Made by a program: the position numbers and the translations under genes
Shown: piece by piece, positions 1,767-23,244 of the stretch
Numbering within the stretch: the first letter of the stretch is position 1
Layout of the letters: each line of letters begins with the position of its first letter
The notes under the pieces: generated by a model
What the model saw: only the letters and a program-made list of their open reading frames with translations
The model's database searches: none
What the model was told of the DNA's origin: nothing
Origin: Ostrea edulis
Taxonomy: Eukaryota
DNA length: 64,000 bases
Reading direction: 5' to 3'
Assembly: GCF_947568905.1 (NCBI RefSeq)
Contig: NC_079173.1
Coordinates: forward strand, 33,852,001-33,916,000

Positions 1767-4700
1767 CTGAAACACAAAATCAGTAGAGCTTACTCATCCT
1801 GTTTACTGATTACCAAAGAATTTACATTTTTAACATTGTTATTGCAACAAGCCCTTGCTTGGTCTGTAAATCCAGATTAATTTTTTTTTTAAAAAGTTCT
1901 TAATTTGGCACTAGGTTTCATAACATGCAAAAAAAAATGTAAACATTGCACTTCACAAAACGCTGCACGTAACATGCAAAACTTTACATACATCTACACT
2001 AAACATGTTTTTCCAACAGACAATATGACTGTTCCTAAAACTTTCAAGTACAAGCTACTGTTATTTTAACATTTTATCAGTTTTAGAATCAACATCTAGA
2101 TAAATTTAGTCCTGTAGACTATACTTAGCTTCAGGCTGGACATTGTAGTGGCCATACAAACTAATTAAGGGCCTGCTGCTATATATAGACAAACAAATGT
2201 TGCTAAACAACCCACACAATGAAGACAGGTTAATAACGTGTACAGGTTTCTTGTTATAACATTTATCATCATTTCCCTTTCCTCTGTCTGCTCATCTTAA
2301 TAGTCACATAATCTCATGGACTAAAGTGGACATTTATCATGTTTATTGGGCGACATTCTATAAATTATAGACGAAATAGAAATCTGCAAGAATCATAATT
2401 TGTTTATCATTGTTCCAAGTCTGCAAACTTGAGCAACAGATTTTTCATGGTCGGTAGCTTCAGTTTCCTTTCTGTTTTTATACTCCCATGTACAATGTAC
2501 TCTACTTGCTTTAATATCGAAATTTGAAAGAAATATATTCATCAGATTAAAGTTCCATCACTGCTTGTTTTGGTACCTCAATTATTCTCTCTCTCTTGTC
2601 CTGACTTGATGTCCTGAAAAACCTGCAGTATTCCCTTTTTACAACATCTCTACAAATACCCATTTGTTCAATGTACCTGCAAGGTTCTTCTTAACAAGCA
2701 CTTGCACTTTGTCTATCAACAGTTTTTGCACCAAGTAAACCCCAGGGCAGTCAATACAACATGCAAAATCGTCTACATACAAACATAGCTCTACATGAAG
2801 TAAAAGTGAGTGTAACATTCTTAATTTCTACTTATCAAGGATCAGACAGAAAGAAATATATATATACTTGTACAATGTTCAAGCTTATTAATTCACTGAT
2901 ACATTTTCAATATCCATGCAATAATTATCAGATTAGAGGGTCATTTTTTCAATCTGATTAAAAATAGCTCTATAAGCTCCTTAGACAGGTCAGATGTTGT
3001 TAGAAGCATAGCGGATTAAAAACAGCTAATTAAAATTAGATTGTAATTTTTATAGATTATTTTGAGATTATTGTAAATTGATTTTAATGATCCATCATAA
3101 AAATGGATGAAAATAATTTTCACTATCATAAACTTAAGCTGAATAGCTGTAAGCAAATTACATGTAGTTCTAAGCTCTGCCTTATTGTCTTTATGTAAAT
3201 TGAAAAGATCAAAGTAAATTAGAATAATAAACATACAAAACAAAGAGTGTAACCTACCCTATCAAAAAGTCATAAAACCATCAAAATGTATTTCCTATCT
3301 ATAAAATATTCCAATCTATAAAAACAAGACTGCCCATAAAACAGTAAGCTTTCTCCTGGTCAAACCTCCACTTTTATCTATATCTGACATACTATGCTTA
3401 AGAAAATTGGAAACTGGTATGAATGACTCCCCCCATGGGTCTGTCATATTTCCCCACCCCCTGTGGAGAGAATCTGTATATTGGGGTGGGAACAGAAAAG
3501 ATAAGATTTCCCCACCCCCTGTGGAGAGAATCTGTATATTGGGGTGGGAACAGAAAAGATCAGATTATTTTTGTATTTTTGTAAATCTTATTTATATGTT
3601 ATGTATATATTTTGATATAGCATCTTAATGGGTTAAAATAGAATGAATTCATACTCTTATCTACACAAAGGGATAAATATTGTAATAACACTGGTTGATT
3701 TTAAGAGCCCCCTCCCCCTCCTCTATACTATACTATATAAAGTGCCTGTCATGACGAATTTTGTGTCTTCACTTCAATATTGAACCTACAGTGTCCTACA
3801 GATAAATTGTCCTGTTATAAACAACCTCATATAAGTACCAGTGCCATCAGTAGATCCTAATTTCAAACACTGTCACTCTCAACACTACAACCTTCCTGCA
3901 AATAATCTGACTTGAAATGAAATGGCAGCCGATCCCTTGTGGGTCTATGACAGTTCCCTATTGATACAGGGTCTGCAGGTATGAGGAGATTATGGGGTGT
4001 GAACAAAACCCTTGAGATCACAGCATTTTAAAAGTAAATTTTCAATGCCCTTAGAAAATAATTTGTCAAAGTCACAATTACTTTTAAAACTCCCAGGTTT
4101 TTACTTGAATTTTTCTGAAAACTGAAGGAGAGATACTTCTACATATATTTAATTTTGATAATATGAATGTTTTTAATCAATTATGGCATATGAATTATAA
4201 ATTCTGTCTGAATCAATCCTAGACCTGTCTCAGTCACGTAACAACCAGTCAGAGCTGAAGTTCTTCATCAATTCTTTAAAGCAGGTATTGAGAAATATAA
4301 AGCCGATTTTGAAACCATCTGAGGATACCATTAACTTTTATATCCGATTCACTCTATTTTAAAATGAATTTGATCCTAAAAAGGAAGATGTTTCATCTTC
4401 TTAAAAGGCAAGTCAATTATTTGCGACATCTTCCATGTACAACTACACATAACCTTAATGGAAATTGACCTTTGACCACAATATATTGGGAAGCATGAAT
4501 ATTCAAAAACTCATTTTTCATGTATTCAAAAATGTTGATTTTTCCCACACCAATAGGTGAAAAATACTCATTTACTGTTCAAATAGACACATTAGTACAA
4601 CACTGCTCTACATACAAAAACAGGGTACACATTACATATACATGTATAATCGTGGAAAGACTATCCTAAACTACATGTTAATATAATTATTTCATACAAT

Positions 4701-5631: not shown

Positions 5632-5953
5632 GGCCAAGTAAAATTAATTAGTAGATTATCATTCAAACTTCACAAAAAAATGGTGGGAGATCTTATTTTT
5701 TATTATTTATTTTTCGCCATGGTATTCTTGACCTCGAAAATGCCTTCTCTCATTGAGAAAAGGCTTTATAAATCATAATTACATGTGTATTTGGGTTTCT
5801 AAAAGGCAAAGTGAAACAAAGTACGTTTACGATACCGAACCGGACATAAAAATATCCGGAAATCGTAATTTTGAAAAATAAAAAAAAATCGGGGCGGGGC
5901 GATTTTCGAGGGGCGGGCGGGAATGATAATCTACTAATTAATTTTACTTGGCC
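5632..5953. mobile_element. PIF/Harbinger-type (Tourist-like) MITE
   Basis: TIR of about 33 bp (GGCCAAGTAAAATTAATTAGTAGATTATCATT) at both ends, flanked by a TAA duplication (5629-31 and 5954-56). Confidence 0.8.
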
Positions 5954-6839
5954 TAACCAATAATAATCTACACATTTCTATACTTTTAAATTTAATTGTG
6001 TTTTCATTGTATACATATTACTTATATGTACTAATTTATCATTTAATGTCTAAAGTTTGAATCTTTCAAATTTATAATTATAATTAATTAATTATATAAT
6101 TAATGTAAACTATTTGTAGATGTGACTTGATATAAATAATAAGAGATCTTTATATTGGTAAACTGTTTGCTCTTTCTTACATAGATCTCTAGTTTACATA
6201 TTATCCTAGTTATGGTGTACCTACAGAAGCCTGCCCCCCTGGGGATTAATGTACCTGTTTATTCCAGGTACACAGGGTGACACCTGTTCCATTAAGGTAA
6301 AATAGGTGTCAATCTTACACCTATTGACTACCTTACACATGTAATTAGAAATCTCTTATACTAACAATCAAATTGACATGTTGATTAGTGTTTAAACACA
6401 AAAATAACATGATCATGAATTAGAAAAATAGGAGTGACTAACATCATGCAAAACAGGTTCCCTTTATTCTGCTGCTCCAGACAGTATAATATTAGTCATC
6501 ATTGATGGGGAATGAGGAACCAGTTTTCACTACCAGGTTCATTTGTTTAATATATCAGGTGGGGACAAGAAACATTGGTGCACGCACCAAAGTTATGGGC
6601 CGAACAAATTTCCAAGAGAGTATCATTGTTTCCATAAACTAAAACTGTCTCGTAAACATATTGATTGGACAAGTGTCCAAATTCGACCCATTAACATACA
6701 AAATGAACAGTAATCTTTTACTCCTTAAAGATCTGTGAACTACGTGTATGTCCAGTAGGCAAAGGTTCTCCAGTGGACTTTTTTAAAGAGCAGTCTGAAC
6801 CTTAACCTTAAACCATTGTGACCTCAGAATAATGTGTTT

Positions 6840-6985
6840 ATATGCTGCTTTACGTCTCATTCTCGAATTTTTCACTCTTATAGAGACGTCACCTTCGGGC
6901 GAATTGAGCAGTGAGGGTTCTTTATCGTGCTAACGCCTATCGTGACACAGGACCATGGCTTACAAGCCTCATCTGAATGACCTAA
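6840..6985 (-). mobile_element. Degraded SINE fragment
   Basis: Shares the gagacgtcacc and gagcagtgagggttctttatcgtgc blocks with the SINE copies at 14252 and 30888. Confidence 0.55.
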
Positions 6986-7577
6986 AAATAATAGATATGG
7001 GTTATTCTGCTCCTTGGATGTTATAAGTTTGATGAATATTTACAATGTTCATTATTGGAAAATATTGAGCTTTTATCACTTGAATATATTAAGCAAACAT
7101 TTTCTAATGTGCAAAATAATTCAACCAATGACTGTTGCATGAATACTGCATTAATTTAATTTCACACTTTCCATATTAAAACTGTGACATTTAATTTGGG
7201 TTATCCAAATATCATAACCTTTCGCTATGAAATAAATCAGATTTATTCAAGATTGAAAATTTTATTGGCACAACCTGTGACAATATTTAACAAAATAGTA
7301 TAATGCAATAATCAAAACATTCTTTAGCACCCTTGGAATTATGCATTTTTCAAAACAAAACAAAAATGACGCCACCTCTATAAATAGGTCAGCAGATAAG
7401 CGCACGTGACCTGTGTGTTACACAAAAAAAACAACAACAACAACAACAAAAAAACCAAAAAACAAATGTTTAAAAAACACCACCGAATTACTTTACATAC
7501 AAAATGAAAACGTATCATGATAATCAGTAATCCAACTTAAAAAAAAAATACACACTCATCCCGCAGAAACTCATACG

Positions 7578-7612
<35 letters not shown>

Positions 7613-10371
7613 TGTGCCGGCCCATAATGAAATTCTGGCAAGAAAAGTTCTCTGTTAAATTCTTATCAGGGGTCTATGAAAAAATTTGGCCCTTGTCAAA
7701 ATAAAGATTATTTTTAAACATAATACTTTTCCTAAAGGCTTACATTTTGTGATTTTATTATCATATTGTATAAAATAGACTGTTTACGACGAAGGGGGGG
7801 GGGGGGGTATTGTACTATATCTTCATTGGGGATTATGTACTGCACTAGACACAAATAATATTGCACTATATCTTCATTGGACTAGATAGTAAGACTGAAA
7901 CAATTCACAGAAATATTGATACTGTTCTCAATATAAACGTTCAATTTCAATGTTTTATTCATTCTGACTCAATTTTCTGTTCATCAGGCTCAGCCGTACT
8001 TATTATTTTTACCCGGATAGGGAACAAAATAGTGTCAAATAACGTTCAGACTGTTGTTTACCTTGAGTCTGATGAAAATAATAATGCACTTTATTGGTTT
8101 GAACTACAGAGCCAACACGTATCTTATCATTTGGCAGTTTGGAAACATTTTGCTTTTTGATAAGATTTTGAATGTGAATCTTGGTAATTAAATTTTTCTT
8201 CAATGTTAATATTGGTTTCTTCTGTAAATTGTATTGTATTGAGAGTATTGAATTGTGGCATTTAAGTATTACAATACGTATTGTATCATGAAGGAGGCGT
8301 ATCGTTTCAGCCCTACTAGATGGAGATAATATAATTAATAAATGTGCACAGAAATTTATATCAATCATGCCTATAGATCACTCACTAACACATTTATTTA
8401 GCATACAACCTGATAGTGAAAGTTGATAACAAGTGTTTAATCAAGCAAAGAGAGCATTTCCTGCTTAAGCAGATTAGATGGGAGATTTCTGTAGTTGTCA
8501 ACTCAGCATGCATTGTTATTATAACTTACAATTATAGACCTACAGGATTTAAATATTTTTTATGGATACAACTGTCACGAAATTGTCAAAGTTCATACAA
8601 TATAAATACATCAGCAAGTTCTCCACAGAGGGAACAGCACCCCACCCCCCTTTTTTTTAATCTGGTGCCCAAAGCCCATTTAGCAATCCATTTGATGCTC
8701 TGCCCCCAACCAAGTTTCGCCTTGACATATCTGTGAAATAAAATGGTGATATGTCTGTGTTTCAGTATGGTGACCAGTTCTATAGATCTCTATTGTTTAA
8801 TCAGTACTCCAGTGCACTGCTTCACCACACACCACTGGTCAACAGGAGAAAACAAAGTGGTCTTTCACAGGAACTGTTCATAAACAGCAATTATTTTGAA
8901 GAGTTTTTTTGTCCTTCTTCCAAGGTAAAATAACTGTCTATCAATTACCTTAATGGACAATTAAACTATCACAGAGAACATTTAATATGTAAACATGATT
9001 GCTGTAATCATCTCATGTTTGTTTTGGAATATTTTCTTTATAAACTGTGTCATTATGATGTATTTTATTGATGAGCTGTATAGCTTAAAGTTAATGAAGA
9101 ATTGAGTATCTAAAAGACCCTAAAAAATATTCTATATTCTGTAAACATAAGAGATTTTCAAGTCTAATATATCGCCTTAGGCATATAATGTGCTGTGCAT
9201 AGAAAAATCACAAGAGTGACCACTCTAGGTCTGTACATGTCATAATATAGAATGGAAATGAATTACAAATTCAAATCATTGAGACAAAATAAAAATCTTT
9301 TAAAGAGTGTAATTTTTAGTCTAAATCATTTTTTCCATTGATATGTATACATAATATAGGGATTAGTTAGCAGCTACAAATGTTCATCTCCAGAACTGTT
9401 CTGTGGATATTTTAGTAGACATTCACAATGTTCATCTCCAGAACTGTTCTGTGGATATTTTAACAGACATTCACAAATGTCTATATAATATTGTACATAC
9501 TGTAGAAGATTTCCAATTTTTTTAACACTGTAAGTATATATGATAATGAATATTCAATAATTTTATAATAATGATGACTCAACAATATTGTACATGCTAT
9601 TAGTCTTTATAGTATTATAGCTATTCAAAGAAGAAAAAGTAACCAACGTCAAGTGTGAATTTCTTGTATGATAATGAGAGGAAACGAATGTCTTTCCAAG
9701 ATTAAATGGTTAAATTTCTTTTGATCATGTTAATGTAAATTAGACCACAGACATACTATTTGAAATAGGAAGGGGGTCTTTGGGAGTCATTACTTTTGTC
9801 TCGCGCCTTTACAAACGCTACTGATGATAATCATAATGGCTGTGTTAAAAATAATTCCGAGATTTTCATTAAACATTGATAAATGTAATGACTAAATTAG
9901 CCTATTTGACGCATCTTTTCACTGTCTCAACCAAAATATAAAAGATCATAAAAATCATAATTTTCGGTTAGATTCTATACATTGCAAACAGCAGCCCTAG
10001 ATTTACAAATCAGTAACCCCCAGTAGCTAGGTGGTAGTGAATGTCGCACAGTAGCCCGAGTAGGCTAGACGATTGTTACAATCAACAATGTACATCACAT
10101 CACACATACAGCACTAATATTTATATTGTGTATACTTTATATAAATAAAACAACATGTGGAAATACTTCATAAAACATATTTTCAATTTATTTATCTTTT
10201 ACTGCAGTGCATATATCGCATCATCAGCTCGCTAAAGCATCATGTAGTTGAACCCTTTGTTTTACCACGTGCTAACATTCCCGATTTAATGTGTATGACC
10301 TTGATACAAATGAAAATATATGAAGTAATGATAAAAAAGGATGGTATATCTAAGTAAAATTATGTTCTTAC

Positions 10372-10437
10372 CGTATAAATTCATTCTGGAAGTCCGCGGT
10401 TTTCTTTCGAGAAATGTTTGTTTTCTTTCGGAGCCAT
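10372..10437 (-). CDS. Candidate first exon of gene 1
   Basis: CpG-rich patch with strong donor TACG|gtaaga at 10372/10371. An ATG at 10437 reads MAPKENKHFSKENRGLPE* and its stop overlaps a second ATG at 10384 (MNLY, phase 1). Linkage to gene 1 is inferred. Confidence 0.3.
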
Positions 10438-10670
10438 TCAAATTTCGCGTCCATACCCACAATGCATCAGCACTAATCTACGGGCGGTAACCGTGCCTTT
10501 GTTCGCATGTATAATTTTAAGATAATCTCGCTGATCAAATAAATGATTGCACAATCAATTGTCGAACACAGTACTTTTGATGTTCTTTTACATGAATGAC
10601 TTATCACTACGCACTGGGGGAAAAACAACAACTTTGATTTCAATGGTGTTTTTCTAGTCACTGCTAACGT

Positions 10671-10992
10671 CAGGGCCGTAAATTACATGGAGGCGGAGGA
10701 GGCAGCTGCCTCCTCCAACTTTTGAGCCAAAAAAAATTAAAATTTAAAGTTCATTTGAATTTATGTTGTTTCCAATAACTAAGAACATGATACCTCCCTT
10801 AAAAAGCATTCCAAATCTTTCTTTTAGAATGAGTTAGTCAAGTAACATCTTAGAAGGCCCTAGAATCAAGGATTTTGCACGAAACGTGTTCAGTGTGCAC
10901 AAAATGTGCTCAGCGTCTGGGGGCCTGGGCGGCCCCCAGACCCCCGCCTAATTTCCTGCCTCCTCCAAATTGAAGGTTAATTTACGGCCCTG
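10671..10992. mobile_element. Non-autonomous DNA transposon (MITE) with CAGGG termini and 5-bp TSD (hAT5-like)
   Basis: Perfect 15-bp TIR CAGGGCCGTAAATTA; AACGT duplicated at 10666-70 and 10993-97. Confidence 0.8.
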
Positions 10993-11508
10993 AACGTCGA
11001 ATTAAAACAAACACCTAGGCTAGTAATTAAATGCAGTAAGAAATTCAATAAATGAATACTAATATAAAGCTGGTACATGTGCCTTTAAAAAACTTTAAAA
11101 ATTAAAGAAATTCGATTATCTTCGTGAAAAAATTCATTGGACATGTAGGCTACATCAAAATCTGCTTTACGTCTATGCTCAAAATGTCAGTATATTACAA
11201 TTAGTTACTGTCACCATTTGATCATTTTCTTTCTTTCTTTTCTTTTTTGTCCCCCCCCCCCTACTTGTCGCCACTGATTCGTTAGACTAGAAATTTTAAC
11301 TTTATACCGCAAGAGTTTTAAACTATTTCTTTTGTATCGATAAATGTCAAAATATTGAACAGGTTCGTTACTGCCAATTAAATATATGAAAAAATATACG
11401 CATCCATTGTTTGAAATCCTCTACGAATATATGAGCCCACTTGCTGCCATCGAGAATTAGGTACTAGTACCGTTCATAGATACATGTACTCCCCGTTTAA
11501 TCTAGATA

Positions 11509-12277
11509 GGTATTCACGGACGGATCAGCCACAAATGCAATAAAAAACGGAAGGGCTGGTATATACATCCAATATCCAAATGGAGAGCGACAATCTGAAG
11601 CAATACCAACAGGCTTGCATTGTTCCAACTACAAAGCTGAAGAAAAAGCCATCAGACATGCTGCACATACCATCACAGACAAAGTCAATATCACAATTCC
11701 AGTTGTTTTCCTTACAGATGCTCTTGTCTGTATTACAGGGCTTGACAAACAACAAGCTACCATCACTAGAACAGGCGCTATTTAACATTCAAAGTCGCAT
11801 AACAGTGCTACAATGGATCCCTTCGCACTGTGGAGTCTATGGTAATGAACAAGCTGACATTCTCGCAAAACAAGGTGCTGGACAACAACAGGAGGAAACC
11901 CCAGTCTGCCTTGCAGAGATGAAAACCATAATCAAATCTCTGTACAGAAAATCCAAACATCAAGACAGTTACCACCATCTGTCGAGACCTGAACAAACCG
12001 TCATATTCAGACTGAGGACAGGACACAATAGACTAAACAAACATCTGAACAGAGTGATGAAAGTGGTACCATCCCGAATGTGTCCCTGTGGTGAGGCAGA
12101 ACAAGATACAACACATATTCTACAGACATGCAAGAACCATCAGACATTGAGATAAAGGATATGGCCATTACCAACAACCATCCAGGAAAAGCTATTTGGA
12201 ACAGTGGAGGACTTACAGAAGATCACCAGATTCGTAGAGGAAGCAGAAATCCAAGTGTAGAGACGAACGACAAGAAG
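11509..12277 (+). mobile_element. 5'-truncated non-LTR retrotransposon: RNase H domain plus C-terminal CCHC region (I-group like), pseudogenised
   Basis: VFTDGSATNAIKNGRAG at about 11510, NYKAE, FLTDA, a 1-nt frameshift near 11725, then QWIPSHCGVYGNEQADILAK, RLRTGH and CPCG…HILQTC. Premature TAA at 12153 with the frame continuing to 12260. Ends in caagaag; near-TSD ATCTAGATA / ATCTCGATA. Confidence 0.88.
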
Positions 12278-13111
12278 ATCTCGATATGGAAACTTGGGGA
12301 ATGATTGTATTATTATTTCTATGCAGCCATTTATGATTACAATTTGTCCAATTTTTTTGAAATTCTAAAACTTAGGCCTAGTTTTCGTTCTAATTTATAA
12401 CATTGTTAAGGGTGTTACACGTTGATTTTTGTGTTAGTATGCAAAGCAAAATAAGATTCACGTATTTGTAGAAATGAATTGTTACTATGTTCAACTTGTA
12501 TCTATAGACATTTTGTATGATATCTAATTTGGTACATAATAATTCAGTATCTGCAGGGTGACGGGGAGGGTGACAGAGTGACGGGGGGGGGGGGTGATAG
12601 GTGACGGGGAGGATGAAGGGGTGATGGGGAGGTGAAAAGGATAGTGATGGAGGTTGCCCCCTCCTTTAACTGAACATTTAAAAAACAAAAAAATGTCATT
12701 TTGCAGTTTACAATCACCCTTTGGGCAATACCGAGTCTTAACACGTATGCCAGAGCCCCCCTTCTCTCACTTTCTCTCTCTCTCTCTCTCTTTCTCGATC
12801 TCCCTCCCCCAAACCTACTAAGTGATGACGTCCTCACAATGTGTAGAAGAGAATACACACATATTATTCTAAAGGCAAAAAAGTACTATGTTAGGTATAG
12901 CTATAGGGATACCTATATAAGTTTATATAATACTCTCTTTCGAATTATGAAAAAGGGTTTTTGAGAAAGAATATTAGTAAGGACATGTCCTCACATCACT
13001 TGTCCTCACTAAGCTAATATTTTGTATCTACATCTTTCACATGTTGTAGATCACATTTAATGAGGGCGTAATTGTGAGGACATTTTTTTTGTCACAGTGC
13101 AATTTTGTCCT

Positions 13112-13149
<38 letters not shown>

Positions 13150-13493
13150 AAAACCTGTTACGTGAGGACGTCCTCACAATGTCTAAGAGAGAATATACCC
13201 ATATCTTATTGTAAAAGCAAAATAAGAAATGTCCCTATTTCAGAATTATGATGTTCCTATATGGTGTACTTCTGTCCTAGGGACGCAGGCTAAATGGTCA
13301 AGGAAATACATATAATTATATCAATTTCTTCTTTAATTGTATCATTTCTAAATTCATAAAACATCATATTATAATTATAGATATTGTCACACAACAAACA
13401 ATGAGAATAACTTTTACATATACAAATACACACACTTTGTAATCGTTATTTACAGATTTCTTAGAAGAAGCATTGCACGTGATATCTAATCAT

Positions 13494-13762
13494 CTACAAC
13501 ATCGGAATGTCTCTGGCTTCAACTCTCAAACTTTCGGGTAACTCCCTCCTTCTTCGTTCTCTTTCTCGCTCAATCGCCTCGTGATAATAGCCGTAATATT
13601 GCCCTCGGTCGGACCTCTCCAGTGGGACAAAAGCATCGGCTTTGGGCCAGGAGATGTCCTGGAGCTCTCGCGGGGGCATACTGGGAAGGTCACGTGTGTA
13701 ACCGAAGAGACGGCATTCTGGTACCCCGGACTGTAATACACCGATATCCTTGTGATAGTAAC
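13494..13762 (-). CDS. Gene A, coding exon 2 (last): GYYHKDIG…EARDIPML*
   Basis: Acceptor tttattttag|GT TAC at 13763/13762 completes the phase-1 codon from exon 1. Open to TAG at 13494; GC-rich relative to flanks. Confidence 0.82.
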
Positions 13763-14251
13763 CTAAAATAAAGCAACCAATGACTGTGTGTAGGGCTTAG
13801 ATGTAGCTCTTTAAATAGGCAAATATTGGGATATACCAGAGAGCTTATTTTGCTGTATTCTTGCATCGCCGTCTCAAAAGTTTATTTTTAAAAAAAATCA
13901 AATTATAGGTACAAATAGGCCTATACGTTTCAAAATACAAATGTAATTATATCCCCATGCGAAATGAAGTGAAAATTCACAGCTTCATATAATTTCGTTG
14001 CAATGTGTTCCTAATAAAATGTATCGTAATTGATACGCTTTGGTTTGAGGCCAGAAATATCTAATGGTAACTGAAATGAAATACTACTAATGCTAAGTTC
14101 TTGGTAAACCTGACACCCTTCTAATCCGACTGTTTCATTCAGTCCGGCAGCTGTTCGGTTTAGAGAAGTTTCACTGCATTGGCAGAATGGCTTTCAAATA
14201 TTTTCCCATTTTTATAGAAGTAAGATTTTGTCATTGTAAATATTGCAATAA

Positions 14252-14483
14252 GATTGATTGATTGAATATTGTTTAACGTCCCTCTCAAGAATATTTCGCT
14301 CATATGGAAACGTCACCAATGCCGGTCAAGGCCTAGGGTTGCAAAATTTAGGCCTATGCTCGGCGCTTATTATCGTGCCACACCTGCTGTGATACGGGGC
14401 CTCGGTTTTTGCGGTCTCATCCGAAGGACCGCCCCATTTAGTCGCCTCTTACGAGGACCCATTTTAACCCGGATCCCTACGGG
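14252..14483 (-). mobile_element. SINE of the family also at 29586 (bivalve Meta/Deu-domain-like)
   Basis: Reverse complement aligns with 29586-29849 (cccgt.gggatccgggtt … cagcaggtgtggcacgataa … gcataggcctaaatttt) and ends in a (CAAT)n tail. Domain naming is from recall. Confidence 0.75.
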
Positions 14484-15019
14484 ATATTGCAAAACAGTTT
14501 TGAATATATCGCGATACGTAAATTGATAGCATTACCTGGCTCTAATCGTGAACATTCATTTAAGACCTGAAAATACTCTACAATCATTTAAACCATGTTT
14601 GTATGCATCATCATGATTTATCATATACAGCCCCTCTTAAATATGTAGATATATATGACGGTAACCTCTGCAGGACCCCTATAAATCCCAGCTTAATACA
14701 TCATCAAAGTTTCTCCCAAGCTAAATCACTATTCGCTAGTTATCAGATTGAACTTTCAGTACATATAAAACCTTTTCCATAATCCTTTAACACGCAGTCA
14801 AACACACAAAACAATTGGAAGTTTTCCAATGATTAAAACAGGAAATTACAGAATTTTATAGATTAATAATTTGGGTGCACATCGTTGTATTCCAATTTCA
14901 CCCCCCATGTATTTATCGTCTCTTTTCCCCTGCCTGCTTCATGAACACCACAACATCATTCAGCTCCCACCCCTAACTTTAATCAATGTAACCCCTATCT
15001 CCCGCCCTTTACATTTTGA

Positions 15020-15140
15020 CCCTCCCTATTTACCAGAGGGCGTGTCTCTCTTTTTCAATAAAATCCTCCCTATTTACCAGAGGGCGTGTCTCTCTGTCTC
15101 AATAAGACCCTCCCTATTTACCAGAGGGCGTGTCTCTCTG
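15020..15140 (-). repeat. 44-bp triplication spanning the gene A exon 1 donor
   Basis: cctccctatttaccagagggcgtgtctctct occurs three times, giving GT donors at 15121, 15077 and 15033. Confidence 0.9.
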
Positions 15141-15386
15141 CCTCATGAAGTTCACCCACTCATCCTCGCTCTGCATCTCCTTGGCGTCTCGTTTAGTGTC
15201 TCTAGGCAACGATCGGTACTGGTGATGACCTATCCAGCTCCTCTCGGAGGGTACGTAGTGGGCAGGGCCATTCCAGATGAGTGACTTGCCATCCCCACTG
15301 AGATAGTTGTGCATGGGGGTAGCGTTGTGGGGCCCTCGGTCAAATAGTCTTGCACCGGCACTTGTTGCATATTCCGGGTGTTGCAT
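15122..15386 (-). CDS. Gene A, coding exon 1; uncharacterised 177-aa protein, join(15386..15122, 13762..13494)
   Basis: 88 codons plus 1 nt, donor CTCTG|gtaaat. 58/85 aa identical to gene B exon 1 with no gaps, which supports coding constraint. Confidence 0.88.
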
Positions 15387-17836
15387 GGTGAATCTATATG
15401 CATTGAAGCAAACTCATGTTTGGTTATTTGAAATAGAAATAGACATATTAGTATGTACTTAACTTGATCTATATATACTAGCCAGTTTGTAGGAAATCTG
15501 TGATAGATCGGGACCGTAGGAAGCAATTTCAAAGTGGATATGTAGGAGGCAACCCACTCAACAGTGTTGATCATAAAAAGGTCACCTGATTATCACACTG
15601 TCCTCTAAAGAGAATATCACACAAGTACACGTAGCCATGAGCAACATATTAAATGTTGATGAATGGTCGATCACTGAAACTTGACTCAATGGTAACCGAA
15701 ACTTGATTGAATGGTTACCGGTTACTGAAATGTCCCTTCCATTCAGTGAACTCAAAGGCGACTTGAAAGTACTTTATCAGTGATGAGTAAGTTATCATTC
15801 AGTCATTAGTATAATGGTAATTTCTATCATTTTAGTACATCACATCACATCACAGGGTGAAATCTAACCTTTCAGTGACCTTTCCGTGACCTTTCCGTTC
15901 AGTGTTCGATTTCACCTTGTGATGCACGAGGACATTTTCTAAACTCTTTGAACTGGATGGTATCAATTTTATTCTTGATCATTCCCATTCCTTGTAATAT
16001 TGTAACAGACACTGTAGAGTTTCTGCTGACAATCGAGCGCGGTACCTCCGGCACGACAGTCTAGTGTTCTTCTGACTGAGCTGAAGGGTTAACACATTAG
16101 CCAGAGGTAATTAATAGAAAGATTCTTATCTCCAACAAAACACTGTCTTAAAATAATTAATAAGACTAATTGACAAACAGATACAAAAAGATACAATTAA
16201 TGATTTTTCAGGAAACATTTCTTCTTAGTTTTTCACATTATAAAAGAAGTGGATCAAAGGAAGTGTAGATCAATGTGATGTCAGGTGCCTGTGATTTGTG
16301 TTGATATTTAAGCTAATTCCTTTGGATGGGATGGTCAACGAGACTGTTTATTTATACTTGTAAATATACACTACATCTCCCAAGTCTAGAATGATGCATG
16401 TGTATAGACACACCCCCACCCCCGTCCCCGCACGCACTCTGTCTCGGTGTGTGTACAGGAAGAGTTACCGATCTTTACACGTGACACAAATGCATTTAAC
16501 AGACCTGGCACATCGTTTTCAAAGCAGGGAGGGTGGATGGAGGGGAGGGGGGCGGGGCGGAAGAGAAAAGATTAAAGAATTTACATATGTGTGTAGTTGT
16601 ACATACCTATTCTGACCAATGAATCAGACGTAAATTACAATGCATGTTGTAAAGAAACGAAAATTCTGTACATAATTGTCTTATATCTACTAATTAATAT
16701 TGTCAACGAAAATTCTGTATATAATTGTTGTCCTATATCAACTAATATTGTCAACGAGACTAAGGACAGCAACGTCCGTTTAAAATTCTTACCTGGAACA
16801 GGTGTAAATGTAAACACAGGGGATATTGATCCGGTTACTAAGTATGTATTGCAATGTAAACATCCGGTTGTGACTTGTCCGTAATGCGATATTAGGAGCT
16901 AGAACACCCAGACAAGCCATTTAAGACGGTGAATATGCCTCATTTTGTCTTATCACACAGTAACTATTTAATTAATGGATTCTCTATCTTATGTTAAATC
17001 TTGTATGTACGTAAGACGACACAGCCATAAAATACACACACCAAGTATAAAAGAAGGGGGGGGGGTGTACTACATATATAATGTATGGAGTATATAATTG
17101 AACTATACACTCTGGAAAATACCGGATAATGTGGATATGGCACATACATGTACAGTATATACAGTATGCAAAGAGATTAAAGTCCGATGGAAGTAAAATT
17201 TGCAGATATTGAGCATGCAGCCCCATAAGAATGAAGGTGGGCGTACCCCTCCCTTCGGAATAAATATGAAATTCATATATGGATATCAGTAAAATGTTCA
17301 AGAGTATATGCCCTCTACATGAACACTTTGAAATGCCTTGGCCTGTTGTATTACATTAATTATAAAGGTCTTATACCGATTAACTAGGCACTGCACGGTC
17401 AATTATTCTAGAGATTAAATTTGTGTTAAGATAGTTACATATGTACGTCTTTGAATCGTTTCTTTTTGATAGACATCTGAGATATAACAATGGGTATTTG
17501 GCATGCACAACTAGTCTGATATGTGACTTTCGTTTAATACAGCCTTATGCATGCCCTTTTGACAGTAATAAAAATAATAGGATCATGCACGTGCATATTC
17601 ATGTACGTTTCTAGAACTAAACTCGGTATATTTGGAGGATTTTCAATTAGGGGAGGGGTGTAAATTAGATCCCCTGTACTTATATACTTATGTTTGGCTT
17701 CTACATCTTTACATTTATGCATCTTAAAAGTAGCATTTAAAATGGATAAGTAAGGGTACCTTTAATACAAGCACAAGTACTGGATCCTCCACTCTAAAGT
17801 CTAGATAGTTTGTCGCAACTAATGAAATGCGTAAAC

Positions 17837-17989
17837 ATTCAGATGAAGATTTCACATTTATTCCAAAGCGCTTTCGCTCTACAGTACTTTGAGCAGTGGG
17901 ATTTGACAATCGCTGTTGCTTTTCAAATTCCACTATAAGAGCCGTAGAGCGAAAGCACTTTGGAATAAATGTGAAATCTTCATCTGAAT
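17837..17989. repeat. 153-bp foldback element (46-bp near-perfect inverted repeat), probable MITE
   Basis: attcagatgaagatttcacatttattccaaagcgctttcgctctac pairs with gtagagcgaaagcactttggaataaatgtgaaatcttcatctgaat (1 mismatch). No clear TSD. Confidence 0.75.
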
Positions 17990-18026
17990 TTATATACATA
18001 TTTACTGTTACCTTTCCTTAGCCGCC

Positions 18027-18300
18027 ATGCAACGACCCGAGTACGCGACAAGTGCGGGAATAAACATAAGACTCAGAGGACCACACAATGCCACGCCCCT
18101 TCACAACTATCTGTCAGGTGACGGGAAGTCTCACGTGTATATGGGTCCCGCCTACTATGTTCCCTCAGAAAACCGGTGGATAAAGTTCCATGAATACCGC
18201 TCAATTCCCCGGGAATCAAAGAGAGATGCGATTCTGATGGAGTCGGAAGACCAGTGGGTAGCCTTCCAAAGGAAGAGGGATGCCGAAAGTCATCCAGGAG
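18027..18300 (+). CDS. Gene B, coding exon 1; uncharacterised 172-aa paralog of gene A, join(18027..18300, 22720..22964)
   Basis: GCCGCCATG start context; 91 codons plus 1 nt; donor GGAG|gtaagg; gap-free homology to gene A exon 1. Confidence 0.88.
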
Positions 18301-18639
18301 GTAAGGCTATCAACAATCTAATCAAAATTAATTAAAACAAATGTAGCAATCAAAGGATCTAATTTTAATTAGATTGGGTTTCTGTCAGAGGAATTTTCAT
18401 GAAAATGACACGATGTCCAATTTTCTCAGTGTATACTGAGAATGAGGCATATATCGTGCAAATCTTTCTTTTAGTGCTTCAATTCATGAAAATAAATGTA
18501 TGTACTGAAGGTAAATAACTAAAACAATAATATCTGTAACATAAATACTATTGTACTATTTTTACATAATCTCTAGCTGAAAATGTCATCATTGGTATAC
18601 ATGTAATAGTGTAAAGGCTGTTAACGGGGGGGGGGGGTA

Positions 18640-21600
18640 ATAGGGGGTATACATGATTGATGAGATGGTAGTGGTCAATTAACAGGGAGTATGTGGGGGT
18701 ATACATGATTGATGGGATGATTGTGGTCAATTAACAGGGGGTGTGGGGGTATACATGATTGGTGGGATGGTGTTAACAGGGGGTGTGGGGGTATACATGA
18801 TTGGTGGGATGGTTGTAGTCAATTAACAGGAGGTGTGGGGGTATACATGATTGGTGGGATGGTATTAACAGGGGGTGTGGGGGTATACATGATTGATGGG
18901 ATGGTGTAGTCAATTAACAGGGGTGTGGGGGTATACATGATTGGTGGGATGGTGTTAACAGGGGGTGTGGGGGTATACATGATTGATGGGATGCTGTAGT
19001 CAATTAACAGGGGTGTGGGGGTATACATGATTGGTGGGATGGTGTTAACAGGGGGTGTGGGAGTATACATGATTGGTGGGATGGTTGTAGTCAATTAACA
19101 GGGGGTGTGGGGGTATACATGATTGATGGGATGGTTGTAGTGAATTAACAGGAGGTGTGGGGGTATACATGATTGATGGGATGGTTGTAGTGAATTAACA
19201 GGAGGTGTGGGGTATACATGATTGATGGGATGGTTGTAGTGAATTAACAGGGGGTGTGGGGGTATACATGATTGGTGGGATGGTTGTGGTCAATTAACAG
19301 GGGGTGTGGGGGTATACATGATTGGTGGGATGGTATTAACAGGGGGTGTGGGGGTATACATGATTGGTGGGATGGTGTTAACAGGGGGTGTGGGAGTATA
19401 CATGATTGATGGGATGGTGTAGTCAATTAACAGGGGGTGTGGGGGTATACATGATTGGTGGGATGGTGTTAACAGGGAGTGTGGGGGTATACATGATTGA
19501 TGGGATGGTGTAGTCAATTAACAGGGGGTGTGGGGGTATACATGATTGGTGGGATGGTGTTAACAGGGGGTGTGGGGGTATACATGATTGGTGGGATGGT
19601 TGTAGTCAATTAACAGGAGGTGTGGGGGTATACATGATTAGTGGGATGGTGTTAACAGGGGGTGTGGGGGTATACATGATTGATGGGATGGTTGTGGTCA
19701 ATTAACAGGGGTGTGGGGGTATACATGATTGATGGGATGGTGTAGTAAATTAACAGGGGGTGTGGGGGTATACATGATTGGTGGGATGGTGTTAACAGGG
19801 GGTGTGGGAGTATACATGATTGATGGGATGGTGTAGTCAATTAACAGGGGGTGTGGGGGTATACATGATTGGTGGGATGGTGTTAACAGGGAGTGTGGGG
19901 GTATACATGATTGATGGGATGGTGTAGTCAATTAACAGGGGGTGTGGGGGTATACATGATTGGTGGGATGGTGTTAACAGGGGGTGTGGGGGTATACATG
20001 ATTGGTGGGATGGTTGTAGTCAATTAACAGGAGGTGTGGGGGTATACATGATTGATGGGATGGTTGTGGTCAATTAACAGGGGGTGTGGGGGTATACATG
20101 ATTGGTGGGATGGTGTTAACAGGGGGTGTGGGAGTATACATGATTGATGGGATGGTGTAGTCAATTAACAGGGGGTGTGGGGGTATACATGATTGGTGGG
20201 ATGGTGTTAACAGGGAGTGTGGGGGTATACATGATTGATGGGATGGTGTAGTCAATTAACAGGGGGTGTGGGGGTATACATGATTGGTGGGATGGTGTTA
20301 ACAGGGGGTGTGGGGGTATACATGATTGGTGGGATGGTTGTAGTCAATTAACAGGAGGTGTGGGGGTATACATGATTGATGGGATGGTTGTGGTCAATTA
20401 ACAGGGGGTGTGGGAGTATACATGATTGATGGGATGGTGTAGTCAATTAACAGGGGTGTGGGGGTATACATGATTGGTGGGATGGTGTTAACAGGGAGTG
20501 TGGGGGTATACATGATTGATGGGATGGTGTAGTCAATTAACAGGGGGTGTGGGGGTATACATGATTGGTGGGATGGTGTTAACAGGGGGTGTGGGGGTAT
20601 ACATGATTGGTGGGATGGTTGTAGTCAATTAACAGGAGGTGTGGGGGTATGCATGATTAGTGGGATGGTGTTAACAGGGGGTGTGGGGGTATACATGATT
20701 GATGGGATGGTTGTGGTCAATTAACAGGGGTGTGGGGGTATACATGATTGATGGGATGGTGTAGTCAATTAACAGGGGGTGTGGGGGTATACATGATTGG
20801 TGGGATGGTGTTAACAGGGGGTGTGGGAGTATACATGATTGATGGGATGGTGTAGTCAATTAACAGGGGGTGTGGGGGTATACATGATTGGTGGGATGGT
20901 GTTAACAGGGGTGTGGGGATATACATGATTGGTGGGATGGTTGTAGTCAATTAACAGGAGGTGTGGGGGTATACATGATTGATGGGATGGTGTTAACAGG
21001 GAGTGTGGGGGTATACATGATTGATGGGATGGTGTAGTCAATTAACAGGGGGTGTGGGGGTATACATGATTGGTGGGATGGTGTTAACAGGGGGTGTGGG
21101 GGTATACATGATTGGTGGGATGGTTGTAGTCAATTAACAGGAGGTGTGGGGGTATACATGATTGATGGGATGGTTGTGGTCAATTAACAGGGGGTGTGGG
21201 GGTATACATGATTGATGGGATGGTGTAGTCAATTAACAGGGGGTGTGGGGGTATACATGATTGGTGGGATGGTGTTAACAGGGAGTGTGGGGGTATACAT
21301 GATTGATGGGATGGTGTAGTCAATTAACAGGGGGTGTGGGGGTATACATGATTGGTGGGATGGTGTTAACAGGGGGTGTGGGGGTATACATGATTGGTGG
21401 GATGGTTGTAGTCAATTAACAGGAGGTGTGGGGGTATACATGATTGGTGGGATGGTGTTAACAGGGGGTGTGGGGGTATACATGATTGGTGGGATGGTTG
21501 TAGTCAATTAACAGGAGGTGTGGGGGTATACATGATTAGTGGGATGGTGTTAACAGGGGGTATGTGGGGTATACATGATTGATGGGATGGTTGTAGTCAG

Positions 21601-22075
21601 TTAACAGGGGTGTGGGGGTATACATGATTGATGGGATGGTTGTAGTAAATTAACAGGGGGTGTGGGGGTATACATGATTGATGGGATGGTTGTGGTCAAT
21701 TAACAGGGGGTGTGGGGGTATACATGATTGGTGGGATGGTGTTAACAGGGGGTGTGGGGGTATACATGATTGGTGGGATGGTTGTAGTCAATTAACAGGA
21801 GGTGTGGGGGTATACATGATTAGTGGGATGGTATTAACAGGGGGTGTGGGGGTATACATGATTGATGGGATGGTGTAGTCAATTAACAGGGGGTGTGGGG
21901 GTATACATGATTGATGGGATGGTTGTGGTCAATTAACAGGGGGTGTGGGGGTATACATGATTGATGGGATGGTGTAGTCAATTAACAGGGGGTGTGGGGG
22001 TATACATGATTGATGGGATGGTTGTGGTCAATTAACAGGGGATGTGGGGGCATACATGATTGGTGGGATAGTTGT
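18640..22075 (+). repeat. G-rich minisatellite, alternating about 42-bp and 48/49-bp units (about 75 units), in the gene B intron
   Basis: Unit core ttaacagggggtgtgggggtatacatgattg(a/g)tgggatggt, with or without gtagtcaa. Confidence 0.95.
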
Positions 22076-22719
22076 AGTGAATTTAATGCGATTTGACACT
22101 TATCTTTCCGTTGTTTTCTTTTCCTGAAATGTTTGTTTGTAGAATAAACACAATTCTGACAGAATTTATCAGATAAAATGAAAGTAAGCAGCTTCCTTAA
22201 CGTGTACCTCTCTCTTTCAAACGTTTGGTAGCGGATTAAGAGGGGGGACACACCCCTTCCCTTTTGTGACAAAAACAAACTGTAGTGTGATTTGACATTA
22301 TACATACAAACAAGTGCATGAACACAAACAAATCAATTATTTGTTATTTATTATATATAAAGTATAACTAAAAATAACACATGAAAGTAGCCTAAAAACC
22401 CTGTAGCCACCACCCACTTTAATAAATCCTGGATCTGCCACTGTATTACATGCATGTATGAGTGTGTGCATGCATCTGAAGTTGAACCTTCTCATGTGTA
22501 CACGGTGATTGAAATGCAATTATATACAGATATATATTACATATCATACAATACACGCACCCTGTTTTTCATGCATACATGTATTTTTATTGTCAGAAGA
22601 TATAGGTGCTGTATGTGCGGTAATGTAATATCTTATGGAGATTGGTTAGTGACCTTCATTTTACCTACAGATTTTTACAAACATTTTTGAGTTTGAACGT
22701 AATTGGTTTCCTTTTGTAG

Positions 22720-22964
22720 GAATCACGATGTCCGGTAAACCAGAAGCTTTCACCGGAGTTCCGGTCCCTACGTTACTTCCATGGCGGAAAGATGCCTGGA
22801 CCAAAAATTGGACAGGTTCCGGATACTTTTTGCCATCAGGAAACAAATGGTTCCATGATCAGGACTCGCCAGCTATACCCAGAGAATCTCTGATGTTCTA
22901 TAACGAGGAGGACTGGATCAAATTTAAATACATGACAGAGAACCAATCACTAGCCAATAATTAA
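22720..22964 (+). CDS. Gene B, coding exon 2 (last); second diverged copy of the shared module
   Basis: Acceptor tttccttttgtag|GA ATC completes phase 1. WTGSGYFLPSGNKW…IPRES…NEEDWIKF mirrors YMGPAYYVPSENRW…IPRES…SEDQWVAF in exon 1. Confidence 0.85.
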
Positions 22965-23244
22965 GTGATCATGTGACTTGATTATAAATTTCCAGAATAA
23001 CTGTTAATCTTCAGCAACTGGTTACCCTACTGAGGTTCAATTGTCTGTCTTTCATATTATAGTCAATGATATAAATCTATTAATTTCTTTATTGAATTTT
23101 TTCAGTATTTAATGTTTATCTAAAAAATGATAAAATATGGTTTATATCAAGTGCTTTCCTTATAAATGTTCATATGCTTTCCCTCTGTACCTTCACACAG
23201 CTAAAATAGCACACAACAGCTAAAATAGCACACAACAGCTATTT

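What the first reader, a model, noticed from the sequence alone, without database searches (positions are those of the whole stretch)
13494..22964. Head-to-head pair of paralogous genes encoding an unrecognised protein module
Genes A (minus) and B (plus) diverge from a 2.6-kb interval. Their first coding exons are 58/85 aa identical without gaps and both end in a phase-1 intron, but their second exons are unrelated. I cannot assign a family. Small size, aromatic/Pro/Arg-rich composition and short repeated modules resemble ciliary or sperm microtubule-inner proteins, but that is only an inference. An inverted duplication followed by exon replacement would explain the arrangement.
Basis: partly seen in the sequence, partly recalled or inferred. 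Interest (0 to 1): 0.7.

Follow-up and report, generated by a model that had tools for sequence, protein, structure and literature searches.

The report
Oyster trochin and its ancient paralogue
The two back-to-back genes are real and expressed: one is the flat-oyster copy of trochin, a known spiralian-only gene of larval ciliary bands, the other is an unnamed ancient sister gene, and they have stayed head-to-head in molluscs and a ribbon worm.

Summary
Two divergent genes share a first coding exon (61/93 aa identical, E 2e-45), and each ends at a phase-1 GT donor.

RNA-like contigs show that both genes are spliced. They also correct the models:
- Both genes carry a further 5' non-coding exon inside the "2.6-kb interval".

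The family is not unknown. Gene A (177 aa) is the orthologue of trochin (Wu et al. 2020, Nat Commun 11:4171). Trochin is spiralian-specific and is expressed in prototroch and ciliary-band cells. It has no Pfam model, no solved relative and no known biochemistry.

Gene B (172 aa) is a trochin paralogue. That paper lists its Crassostrea gigas counterpart as a separate gene and never links it to trochin.

The second exons are not replaced. They show no direct similarity (E 0.4), yet each matches the C-terminal half of annelid and bryozoan trochin (E about 4e-9).

The duplication is ancient. Synonymous sites are saturated, and the same head-to-head A(-)/B(+) pair exists in Pinctada, Potamilus, Haliotis and the nemertean Lineus.

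The paralogy and the conserved pairing were not found described in the held literature. A microtubule-inner-protein role is untested. The scan had not noted this on other DNA.

The parts
13494..13762 (-). Gene A (trochin orthologue), second coding exon, phase 1. It encodes G/YYHKDIGVLQSGVPECRLFGYTRDLPSMPPREL...YYGYYHEAIERERERRRRELPESLRVEARDIPML, with the stop at 13496-13494. The 3'UTR runs to at least 13432.
   Evidence: Joint 15122->13762 in contigs of runs X1 and X2. Acceptor tattttag|gt. 64% identical over 88 aa to residues 90-177 of Mytilus trochin P0025, E 7e-44.
13763..15121 (-). Gene A intron, 1359 nt, GT..AG, phase 1. It holds a very high-copy interspersed repeat at about 14252-14454.
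   Evidence: joint table and depth table.
15122..15393 (-). Gene A first coding exon. ATG at 15386, acceptor catatag|attcaccATG at 15394/15393, and 88 codons plus the first base of a split GGT codon.
   Evidence: 70% identical to Mytilus trochin residues 1-88, E 8e-46.
15019..15145 (-). 44-bp tandem array (2.9 copies) that repeats the end of A's exon 1 together with its donor site. Only the first copy is used.
15394..16880 (.). Shared upstream interval. It must hold gene A's unlocated 5' non-coding exon and both promoters.
   Evidence: The contig of A runs on for 15 nt beyond the acceptor at 15394. B's 5' exon starts at or before 16881. This part is inferred.
15631..15645 (+). X-box-like (RFX-type) site GTAGCCATGAGCAAC. 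A second site, GTAACCGGTAAC, lies at 15714-15725.
   Evidence: These are 2 of only 3 strict matches in the 64-kb window, where 0.55 are expected. The sites are not alignably conserved. This is a lead only.
16881..16928 (+). Gene B 5' non-coding exon (at least 48 nt), with donor acg|gtgaat.
   Evidence: X1 contig of 579 nt: 33 nt lie at 16881-16913, followed by 15 diverged letters that match 16914-16928, and the contig then joins to 18021/18022.
16929..18021 (+). Gene B intron 1 (in the 5'UTR), 1093 nt, GT..AG.
18022..18300 (+). Gene B first coding exon. ATG at 18027, and 91 codons plus the first base of a split GGA codon.
   Evidence: Hits to the orthologues P0001, P0009, P0014 and P0018.
18301..22719 (+). 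Gene B intron 2, phase 1, 4419 nt. A 3.4-kb G-rich minisatellite at 18643-22083 fills most of it.
22720..22964 (+). Gene B second coding exon (acceptor ttgtag|ga). It holds the second copy of the trochin module, ending ...FYNEEDWIKFKYMTENQSLANN*.
   Evidence: 94% identical to residues 93-170 of the spliced 172-aa orthologue P0001, E 4e-57. Internal repeat of exon 1.

Best explanation
Gene A is the flat-oyster orthologue of trochin. Gene B is an ancient trochin paralogue that has no name.

Both encode proteins of about 175 aa built from two copies of a module of about 50 aa. The motif is G-x-G-Y-Y-x-P-S-x-x-x-W ... L-P ... I-x-F-x-S-E-D-x-W. AlphaFold2 predicts it as a hairpin, a strand and a helix.

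The two copies arose by an inverted duplication of an already split gene, because both keep the same phase-1 intron. This happened before molluscs and nemerteans diverged.

The first exon stayed similar under purifying selection. The second exon diverged:
- Trochin kept the L-x-L-x-G-Y ... YYGYYHE part and lost the final NEEDW helix.
- The paralogue kept the NEEDW helix and a canonical second module.

The pair has remained head-to-head. The inferred reason is that both genes are driven from one short shared upstream region in multiciliated (ciliary-band type) cells, where the proteins act in or at the cilium.

Shown here: identity, gene structure, transcription and splicing, homology of the second exons, the age of the duplication, and conservation of the arrangement.

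Inferred: shared regulation, a ciliary site of action for B, and any biochemical role.
For: Identity:
- A's two exons are 70% and 64% identical to Mytilus trochin-type protein P0025.
- A's exon 1 is 51% identical to P0103. By length, N-terminus and C-terminus, P0103 fits the 173-aa Macrostomum row in the trochin alignment of PMC7441323 Suppl. Fig. 3.
- The C. gigas trochin in that figure is 177 aa and ends ...ELPESMRVEARDIPML, like gene A.
- B matches the CGI_10005225-type protein P0001.

Expression and splicing: exon-only contigs with GT..AG joints in two runs, for both genes.

Homologous second exons (hhalign):
- A's C-half against annelid and bryozoan trochin C-half: E 3.5e-9.
- B's C-half against the same: E 5e-9.
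- A's against B's directly: E 0.41.

Motif census:
- A-type proteins have YYGYYHE only.
- B-type proteins have NEEDW only.
- Annelid and bryozoan proteins have both.

Age and constraint:
- dS is not computable (saturated) for A against B and for oyster against Pinctada. dN is 0.12-0.34.
- dN/dS is about 0.05 against a closer oyster.
- Substitutions against the RNA contigs are 7 synonymous to 3 non-synonymous.
- Orthologues, not paralogues, group together within molluscs.

Synteny: A(-)/B(+) head-to-head in Pinctada, Haliotis, Potamilus and Lineus. The ATG-to-ATG gaps are 7.2, 2.8, 7.9 and 0.85 kb.

Ciliary context: trochin in situ hybridisation in ciliary bands and in oyster single-cell ciliary clusters.
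Against: - No tissue or cell-type information exists here for either gene in this species. The two runs are only guessed to be RNA, and their sample labels are coded.
- B's expression in ciliary cells is not documented in anything I could read.
- The partner is not within 10 kb in Octopus, Opisthorchis or Macrostomum, so the pairing is not universal.
- The tree of the first module does not resolve the deep nodes. It does not by itself put mollusc B with nemertean and flatworm B.
- No alignable non-coding conservation was found upstream.
- The X-box-like sites are absent under the same criteria in Pinctada and Haliotis.
- The AlphaFold2 models are confident only for the first module (pLDDT 79-89). 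They are poor elsewhere.
Confidence: 0.85

Rival explanations
1. One reading: a fairly recent local inverted duplication, after which one copy acquired an unrelated second exon (exon replacement or exon shuffling).
For: The second exons show no direct similarity (hhalign E 0.41). The first exons are 66% identical.
Against: - Both second exons match the C-terminal half of single-copy annelid and bryozoan trochin at E about 4e-9, over overlapping columns.
- Both exon types are conserved across phyla, together with the same arrangement.
- dS between A and B is saturated.
Confidence: 0.04
2. The head-to-head adjacency is a historical leftover of the duplication with no function. The genes are regulated independently, and the linkage survives only because rearrangement is slow in these genomes.
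For: - The intergenic distance ranges from 0.85 to 7.9 kb.
- No alignable non-coding conservation was found.
- The pair is not seen within 10 kb in Octopus or in two flatworms.
- Piovani et al. report trochin in the ciliary clusters of the oyster larva but not of the flatworm.
Against: - The same orientation and adjacency are kept in four further genera spanning two phyla.
- The flanking genes differ in every species: nicotinic receptor, granulin, EFCAB5-like. Local gene order has therefore been reshuffled around an intact pair.
- Both transcripts appear together in both RNA-like runs.
Confidence: 0.25
3. The high similarity of the first exons, against unrecognisable second exons, reflects gene conversion between the inverted first exons (concerted evolution) rather than selection.
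For: Inverted repeats 2.6 kb apart can in principle convert each other. The contrast between exon 1 and exon 2 is striking.
Against: - A of oyster is closer to A of Pinctada and Mytilus (77-78%, 70%) than to its own B (67%), and the same holds for B.
- Within molluscs the tree groups sequences by type, not by species.
- dS between A and B exon 1 is saturated, so there has been no recent conversion.
Confidence: 0.04
4. A functional sub-hypothesis from the reader: the proteins are axonemal microtubule-inner or microtubule-associated proteins of long compound cilia.
For: - The proteins are small and mostly predicted disordered on their own. They are rich in aromatic, Pro and Arg residues and have conserved short motifs.
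- There is no signal peptide or transmembrane segment evident in the sequences.
- The mRNA is restricted to cells with long motile cilia, and it appears when the cilia appear.
- X-box-like sites lie in the shared interval in 3 of 5 species.
Against: - No sequence hit to any chain in the PDB, which includes solved axonemes.
- No fold match: best Z 2.3 and no Foldseek match at E <= 0.001 (best 1.2).
- No localisation or proteomic data were found.
- Trochin is absent from other ciliated cells such as foot and apical plate. That argues against a general axonemal component.
Confidence: 0.2

Closest known systems
Trochin (Wu et al. 2020, Nat Commun 11:4171; PMC7441323)
   Same: Gene A has the same length as C. 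gigas trochin (177 aa) and the same motifs throughout: NYLSGDGKS, YVPSE, SEDxW, LxLxGY, YYGYYHE and the tail ...ELPES.RVEARDIP.L. It is 64-70% identical to the Mytilus orthologue. Gene B shares the N-terminal module and, at profile level, the C-terminal half.
   Different: Gene B lacks the LxLxGY and YYGYYHE signature. It carries a canonical second module ending in NEEDWIKFKY. Among trochins, only the annelid, brachiopod, phoronid and bryozoan proteins keep that ending. B was listed (CGI_10005225) but was neither named nor linked to trochin. No expression pattern for it could be read here.
Lophotrochin (same paper)
   Same: It is spiralian-specific, small, and co-expressed with trochin in ciliary bands. 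Its biochemistry is unknown.
   Different: There is no sequence relationship. Lophotrochin has a DUF4476 N-terminal domain, while trochin-family proteins hit no Pfam model.
Ciliary and sperm microtubule inner proteins (CFAP, SPMIP and CIMIP families)
   Same: Small size, composition, short conserved motifs, low stand-alone fold confidence, and expression tied to motile cilia.
   Different: No sequence or fold similarity to any solved chain. The family is restricted to Spiralia and to a subset of ciliated cells. A luminal location has never been shown.
Conserved bidirectional (head-to-head) gene pairs in animal microsynteny
   Same: A divergent orientation and a short interval are kept across phyla while the flanking genes change.
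   Different: Here the two partners are paralogues of one lineage-restricted gene, not unrelated housekeeping genes. No shared promoter element has been shown.

Membership tests
Trochin family (Wu et al. 2020) | Full-length sequence similarity to the trochin proteins of Suppl. Fig. 3, including the N-terminal NYLSGDGKS...YYVPSE...SEDxW block. | tested here: met
   Gene A exon 1 against Mytilus P0025: E 8e-46. Against Macrostomum P0103: E 9e-25. Gene B exon 1 hits the same set (and the HMM search). The alignment in the paper was read.
Trochin family (Wu et al. 2020) | The trochin-type C-terminal half (LxLxGY ... YYGYYHE), which marks orthology with trochin proper. | tested here: met
   Met for gene A (motif census). 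Not met for gene B, which has NEEDW but no YYGYYHE. B's C-half is still homologous to annelid and bryozoan trochin at profile level (E 5e-9). B is therefore a paralogue within the family, not trochin itself.
Trochin family (Wu et al. 2020) | Restriction to Spiralia, with no detectable relative outside. | tested here: met
   A profile search of 1.84 billion representatives gave 79 hits at E <= 1e-3. Every hit that carries a name is from a mollusc, annelid, nemertean, flatworm or bryozoan. No Pfam hit and no PDB hit. Caveat: many hits are unnamed transcriptome or metagenome contigs.
Trochin family (Wu et al. 2020) | mRNA specific to ciliary-band or other specialised multiciliated cells. | not testable with these tools
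   Known from the literature only: Tritia, Capitella, Platynereis and Terebratalia, and the C. gigas single-cell atlas. Here I could show only that both genes are transcribed and spliced in two runs of unknown tissue.
Microtubule inner proteins of axonemes | Sequence or fold relationship to a protein seen inside doublet microtubules in solved axoneme structures. | tested here: not met
   hmmsearch of the family profile against all PDB chains gave 0 hits at E <= 10. Foldseek against PDB gave no match at E <= 0.001. VIA-align gave a best Z of 2.3.
Microtubule inner proteins of axonemes | Physical location in the microtubule lumen. | not testable with these tools
   This needs localisation or cryo-EM of spiralian cilia.

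The most novel reading that the evidence does not exclude
Trochin and its paralogue may be a pair of complementary half-degenerated copies of one ancestral two-module ciliary-band protein.

The supporting pattern is this:
- Lineages where only one gene type was found (annelids, brachiopods, phoronids, bryozoans) keep both the YYGYYHE part and the NEEDW helix in one protein.
- Lineages with the pair (molluscs, nemerteans, flatworms) have split these parts between two genes. The genes are held head-to-head by one bidirectional promoter, possibly RFX-dependent, so that they are made together and act as a heteromer in compound cilia.

This would be a rare case of a conserved paralogue pair, more than 500 million years old, tied to a clade-defining structure. 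It would give a direct handle on what makes spiralian ciliary bands special.
Probability: 0.25. Interest if true: 0.6.

Novelty: new member of a known kind. Interest (0 to 1): 0.38.

Why it matters
Trochin is one of only two named spiralian-specific genes tied to the ciliary band, a candidate shared trait of a whole super-phylum. Nothing is known about how it works.

Four points from this work give concrete experiments on the origin and function of a lineage-specific gene:
- Trochin has an unrecognised sister gene.
- The two genes share a repeated 50-aa module.
- Their 'unrelated' halves are diverged homologues.
- The pair has stayed head-to-head from bivalves to a nemertean.

The experiments that follow are a co-expression test, a dissection of the shared promoter, and a heteromer test.

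For annotation, this work fixes both gene models in this genome. It also removes the claim of an unknown family.

Tried and rejected
- Pfam scans of the four exon translations and of five full-length orthologues found nothing above noise.
- A PDB sequence search with the family profile gave 0 hits.
- Two AlphaFold2 models were built: a 5-sequence B-type alignment (pLDDT 56) and a 53-sequence alignment on annelid trochin (pLDDT 57). Only the first module is confident.
- Foldseek against PDB and VIA-align wide gave no credible fold match.
The acceptor I considered at 13718 (accag|) is also wrong. The RNA joint puts the acceptor at 13763/13762.
- The weak tblastn hits at 12152-12362 (E about 6) were treated as noise.
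- Phylogenetic footprinting of A's upstream region against another oyster contig (L013) found no alignable conservation.
- RFX and FOXJ1 motif scans found two strict X-box-like sites in the window. Support in other species is inconsistent, so this is kept as a lead only.
- The tree of the first module leaves the deep branches unresolved. It cannot date the duplication by itself.
- Rfam and tRNA scans of 12500-23600 found nothing.
- A literature search by gene identifiers found no papers.
- I could not tell whether gene B is one of the four genes that Piovani et al. named prototrochin, ciliarybandin, mullerin and trochophorin. The identifiers appear only in a figure.
Every search used single exons by reference or natural full-length orthologues from the databases. 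Across the junctions I computed only CDS lengths and single-codon effects.

Full report
WHAT IS THERE

The window is G000:C10:33852001-33916000 of an 895-Mb genome. Earlier notes of this scan call it the flat oyster. I did not verify the species. The window contains no N.

ORF listing finds the two first coding exons at 15114-15386(-) and 18027-18335(+). They are 61/93 aa identical by BLASTP with one gap, E 2e-45. Ungapped, they are 59/88 identical. A six-frame search of the whole genome finds only these two copies, plus a weak third match that is gene B's own second exon.

Both exons end at a GT donor after the first base of a Gly codon, so both introns are phase 1:
- A: tct g|gtaaat at 15122|15121.
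- B: gga g|gtaagg at 18300|18301.

TRANSCRIPTION AND GENE MODELS

Only one reads call was allowed, with at most 6 kb. I laid four runs on 12400-18399.
- Two runs (X3, X6) cover every bin and behave as genomic DNA.
- Two runs (X1, X2) are labelled 'RNA?' and come from a 1-2% diverged organism. They cover only the exons plus repeats.

For gene A, one 649-nt contig (X1) and one 377-nt contig (X2) join 15122 to 13762. This skips 1359 nt with CT..AC on the plus strand, which is GT..AG on the minus strand. Gene A's second coding exon therefore begins at 13762 (acceptor tattttag|gt). The acceptor I first suspected from the sequence (cag| at 13681) would have given another frame.

The CDS is 534 nt, or 177 aa plus a stop. 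The contig continues to 13432, which is 3'UTR.

At its 5' end, the A contig stops following the genome at the acceptor catatag|attcaccATG (15394/15393) and runs on for 15 nt. A further 5' non-coding exon must therefore lie upstream. I could not place it.

For gene B, a 579-nt X1 contig has these parts:
- It covers 18021-18301.
- It runs on for 250 nt beyond the stretch I laid, which is exon 2.
- Its first 48 nt lie at 16881-16928, and the last 15 of them are diverged.
- The donor is acg|gtgaat and the acceptor is ttccttag|ccgccATG.

B's exon 2 (22720-22964, acceptor ttgtag|ga) fits phase 1. It is 94% identical to residues 93-170 of P0001, a spliced 172-aa orthologue from transcript assemblies. 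B's CDS is 519 nt, or 172 aa.

Both 'first exons' are thus second exons of their transcripts. The real distance between the two promoters is under 1.5 kb, not 2.6 kb.

All searches used single exons by reference or natural full-length orthologues.

WHAT FAMILY

Pfam gives nothing for the exons or for five full-length orthologues.

The word-index protein search with B's exon 1 found 22 relatives. The named ones are 'hypothetical' proteins of 171-176 aa from Pinctada, Potamilus and Haliotis.

Because the family stayed open, I ran the one profile search against 1.84 billion representatives. It gave 79 hits at E <= 1e-3. Every hit that carries a name is spiralian:
- Bivalves, gastropods, a chiton and Octopus.
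- The annelid Dimorphilus.
- The nemerteans Lineus and Tubulanus.
- The flatworms Macrostomum, Opisthorchis, Clonorchis, Paragonimus, Dicrocoelium and Hymenolepis.
- The bryozoans Bugula and Watersipora.

This distribution recalled the spiralian-specific genes of Wu et al. 2020. In the supplement of that paper (PMC7441323), the alignment of trochin (Suppl. Fig. 3) contains several matching rows:
- Macrostomum. By length (173 aa), N-terminus and C-terminus, this fits my P0103.
- Annelid sequences of my 'both-motif' type.
- A 177-aa Crassostrea gigas trochin whose C-terminal half reads like gene A's exon 2, down to ...ELPESMRVEARDIPML.

Gene A is 70% and 64% identical, exon by exon, to the Mytilus orthologue P0025. 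Gene A is therefore the trochin orthologue.

Supplementary Data 1 of the same paper lists CGI_10005224 (A-type) and, with the next identifier, CGI_10005225. The latter is nearly the same as P0001 and is B-type. The paper never calls them paralogues.

WHAT IS KNOWN OF TROCHIN

- Trochin has no detectable homologue outside Spiralia by PSI-BLAST or HMMER.
- Its mRNA is specific to the prototroch in Tritia.
- It marks ciliary bands and a few other ciliated structures in Capitella, Platynereis and Terebratalia.
- No biochemical function, localisation or structure has been reported in the library I could search.

ARE THE SECOND EXONS UNRELATED?

Directly, yes. BLASTP gives E 0.5. A shuffle test gives z = 0.4. 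Profile-profile comparison of 11 A-type against 15 B-type C-halves gives E 0.41.

But both profiles match the C-terminal half of the annelid and bryozoan proteins:
- A-type: E 3.5e-9, probability 96%, columns 16-91.
- B-type: E 5e-9, probability 96%, columns 19-118.

The motif census agrees (alignment):
- A-type proteins carry L-x-L-x-G-Y and YYGYYHE but no NEEDW.
- B-type proteins carry NEEDW-x-K-[FY]-K-Y but no YYGYYHE.
- Annelid, bryozoan, brachiopod and phoronid trochins carry both.

B's exon 2 is also a clear internal repeat of exon 1 (tblastn E 3e-6; z = 12; E 6e-8 within P0001).

The ancestral protein thus had two copies of one module, and the two second exons are diverged homologues. 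Exon replacement is not needed.

HOW OLD, AND UNDER WHAT SELECTION

- Nei-Gojobori dS is not computable (saturated) for A against B exon 1 and for every oyster-Pinctada comparison. dN is only 0.12-0.34.
- Against a closer oyster contig (L013), dN/dS is about 0.05, with dS 2.5.
- Ten substitutions between the window and the RNA-like contigs are listed. Seven are synonymous and three are not.
- Within molluscs the first-module tree groups sequences by type, not by species, so there is no concerted evolution. The deep nodes are unresolved.

SYNTENY

I fetched 10 kb on each side of named orthologues. The same arrangement, with A-type on the minus strand diverging from B-type on the plus strand, is present in four other genera:

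| Species | Locus | A-type (-) | B-type (+) |
|---|---|---|---|
| Pinctada imbricata | L004 | 2770..2010 | 10001..12558 |
| Haliotis asinina | L005 | 7142..5924 | 10001..12667 |
| Potamilus streckersoni | L006 | 2082..720 | 10001..13985 |
| Lineus longissimus (nemertean) | L007 | 9146..8454 | 10001..11063 |

In Lineus only 854 bp separate the two start codons.

The outer neighbours differ in each species. The pair has therefore been kept while its surroundings changed.

No partner lies within 10 kb in these genomes:
- Octopus, Opisthorchis and Macrostomum.
- The single 'both-motif' gene of Watersipora, which sits beside a TTL-domain gene and a BAR-domain gene with no family partner.
- The single 'both-motif' gene of Dimorphilus.

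STRUCTURE

AlphaFold2 with 5 B-type sequences gave two modules of moderate confidence, at residues 40-85 and 120-165. Each has three short strands and a helix. The N-terminus and the linker are disordered.

With 53 sequences on annelid trochin, the first module is confident (pLDDT 79-89). It forms a hairpin, a short helix, a strand and a helix. The rest stays below 50, apart from a C-terminal helix.

Neither Foldseek against the PDB nor an exhaustive VIA-align search (best Z 2.3) finds a related fold. The family profile hits no solved chain. The microtubule-inner-protein idea therefore has no direct support, and it is not excluded.

REGULATION (LEAD ONLY)

Two strict X-box-like sites lie at 15631-15645 and 15714-25, inside the shared interval. 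They are two of only three such matches in the 64-kb window, where 0.55 are expected.

Looser X-box matches also occur in the Lineus and Potamilus intergenic regions. None occur in Pinctada or Haliotis. The upstream region does not align with another oyster's.

VERDICT

It is wrong on three points:
- The family is known. It is trochin.
- The exons were not replaced.
- The duplication is ancient.

What appears new relative to the papers I could read:
- Trochin has a conserved paralogue.
- The two share a repeated module and homologous second exons.
- They form a head-to-head pair conserved from molluscs to a nemertean.

Interest is moderate.

Noticed in passing
window 15019-15145: A 44-bp tandem array (2.9 copies) repeats the last ~24 nt of gene A's first coding exon together with its GT donor. 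The RNA-like contigs use only the first copy, and the later copies would read into an in-frame stop.
   Followed up: partly
window 18643-22083: A 3.4-kb G-rich minisatellite (units of 42-46 and 91 bp, GC skew 0.57-0.77) fills most of gene B's phase-1 intron. It produces the many spurious 60-90 aa ORFs on the minus strand.
   Followed up: partly
window 14252-14454 and 12800-13200: Two interspersed repeats of very high copy number. In a DNA run the summed contig depth is about 1e6 and 1e4, against about 16 beside them. The first lies inside gene A's intron. Both also appear in the RNA-like runs. No tRNA or Rfam match was found.
   Followed up: partly
window 23246-23600: A 32-bp tandem array (11 or more copies) lies just downstream of gene B.
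   Followed up: no
window 15631-15645 and 15714-15725; L007:9825; L006:9896: RFX-type X-box-like sites lie in the interval between the two genes. Similar sites with up to 2 mismatches occur in the Lineus and Potamilus intervals, but none in Pinctada or Haliotis.
   Followed up: partly
L008 (Watersipora) and L007 (Lineus): The single bryozoan trochin gene lies directly downstream of a tubulin-tyrosine-ligase-domain gene. The nemertean pair lies upstream of a gene with an EFCAB5_C domain. These are possible ciliary neighbours and were not examined.
   Followed up: no
L012:10001-10723 (Dimorphilus): The annelid trochin gene lacks the phase-1 intron shared by the mollusc A and B genes. Its only intron splits the RGPK / YYGYYHE region. 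The 173-aa cluster members (P0057, P0124) read through that intron.
   Followed up: no
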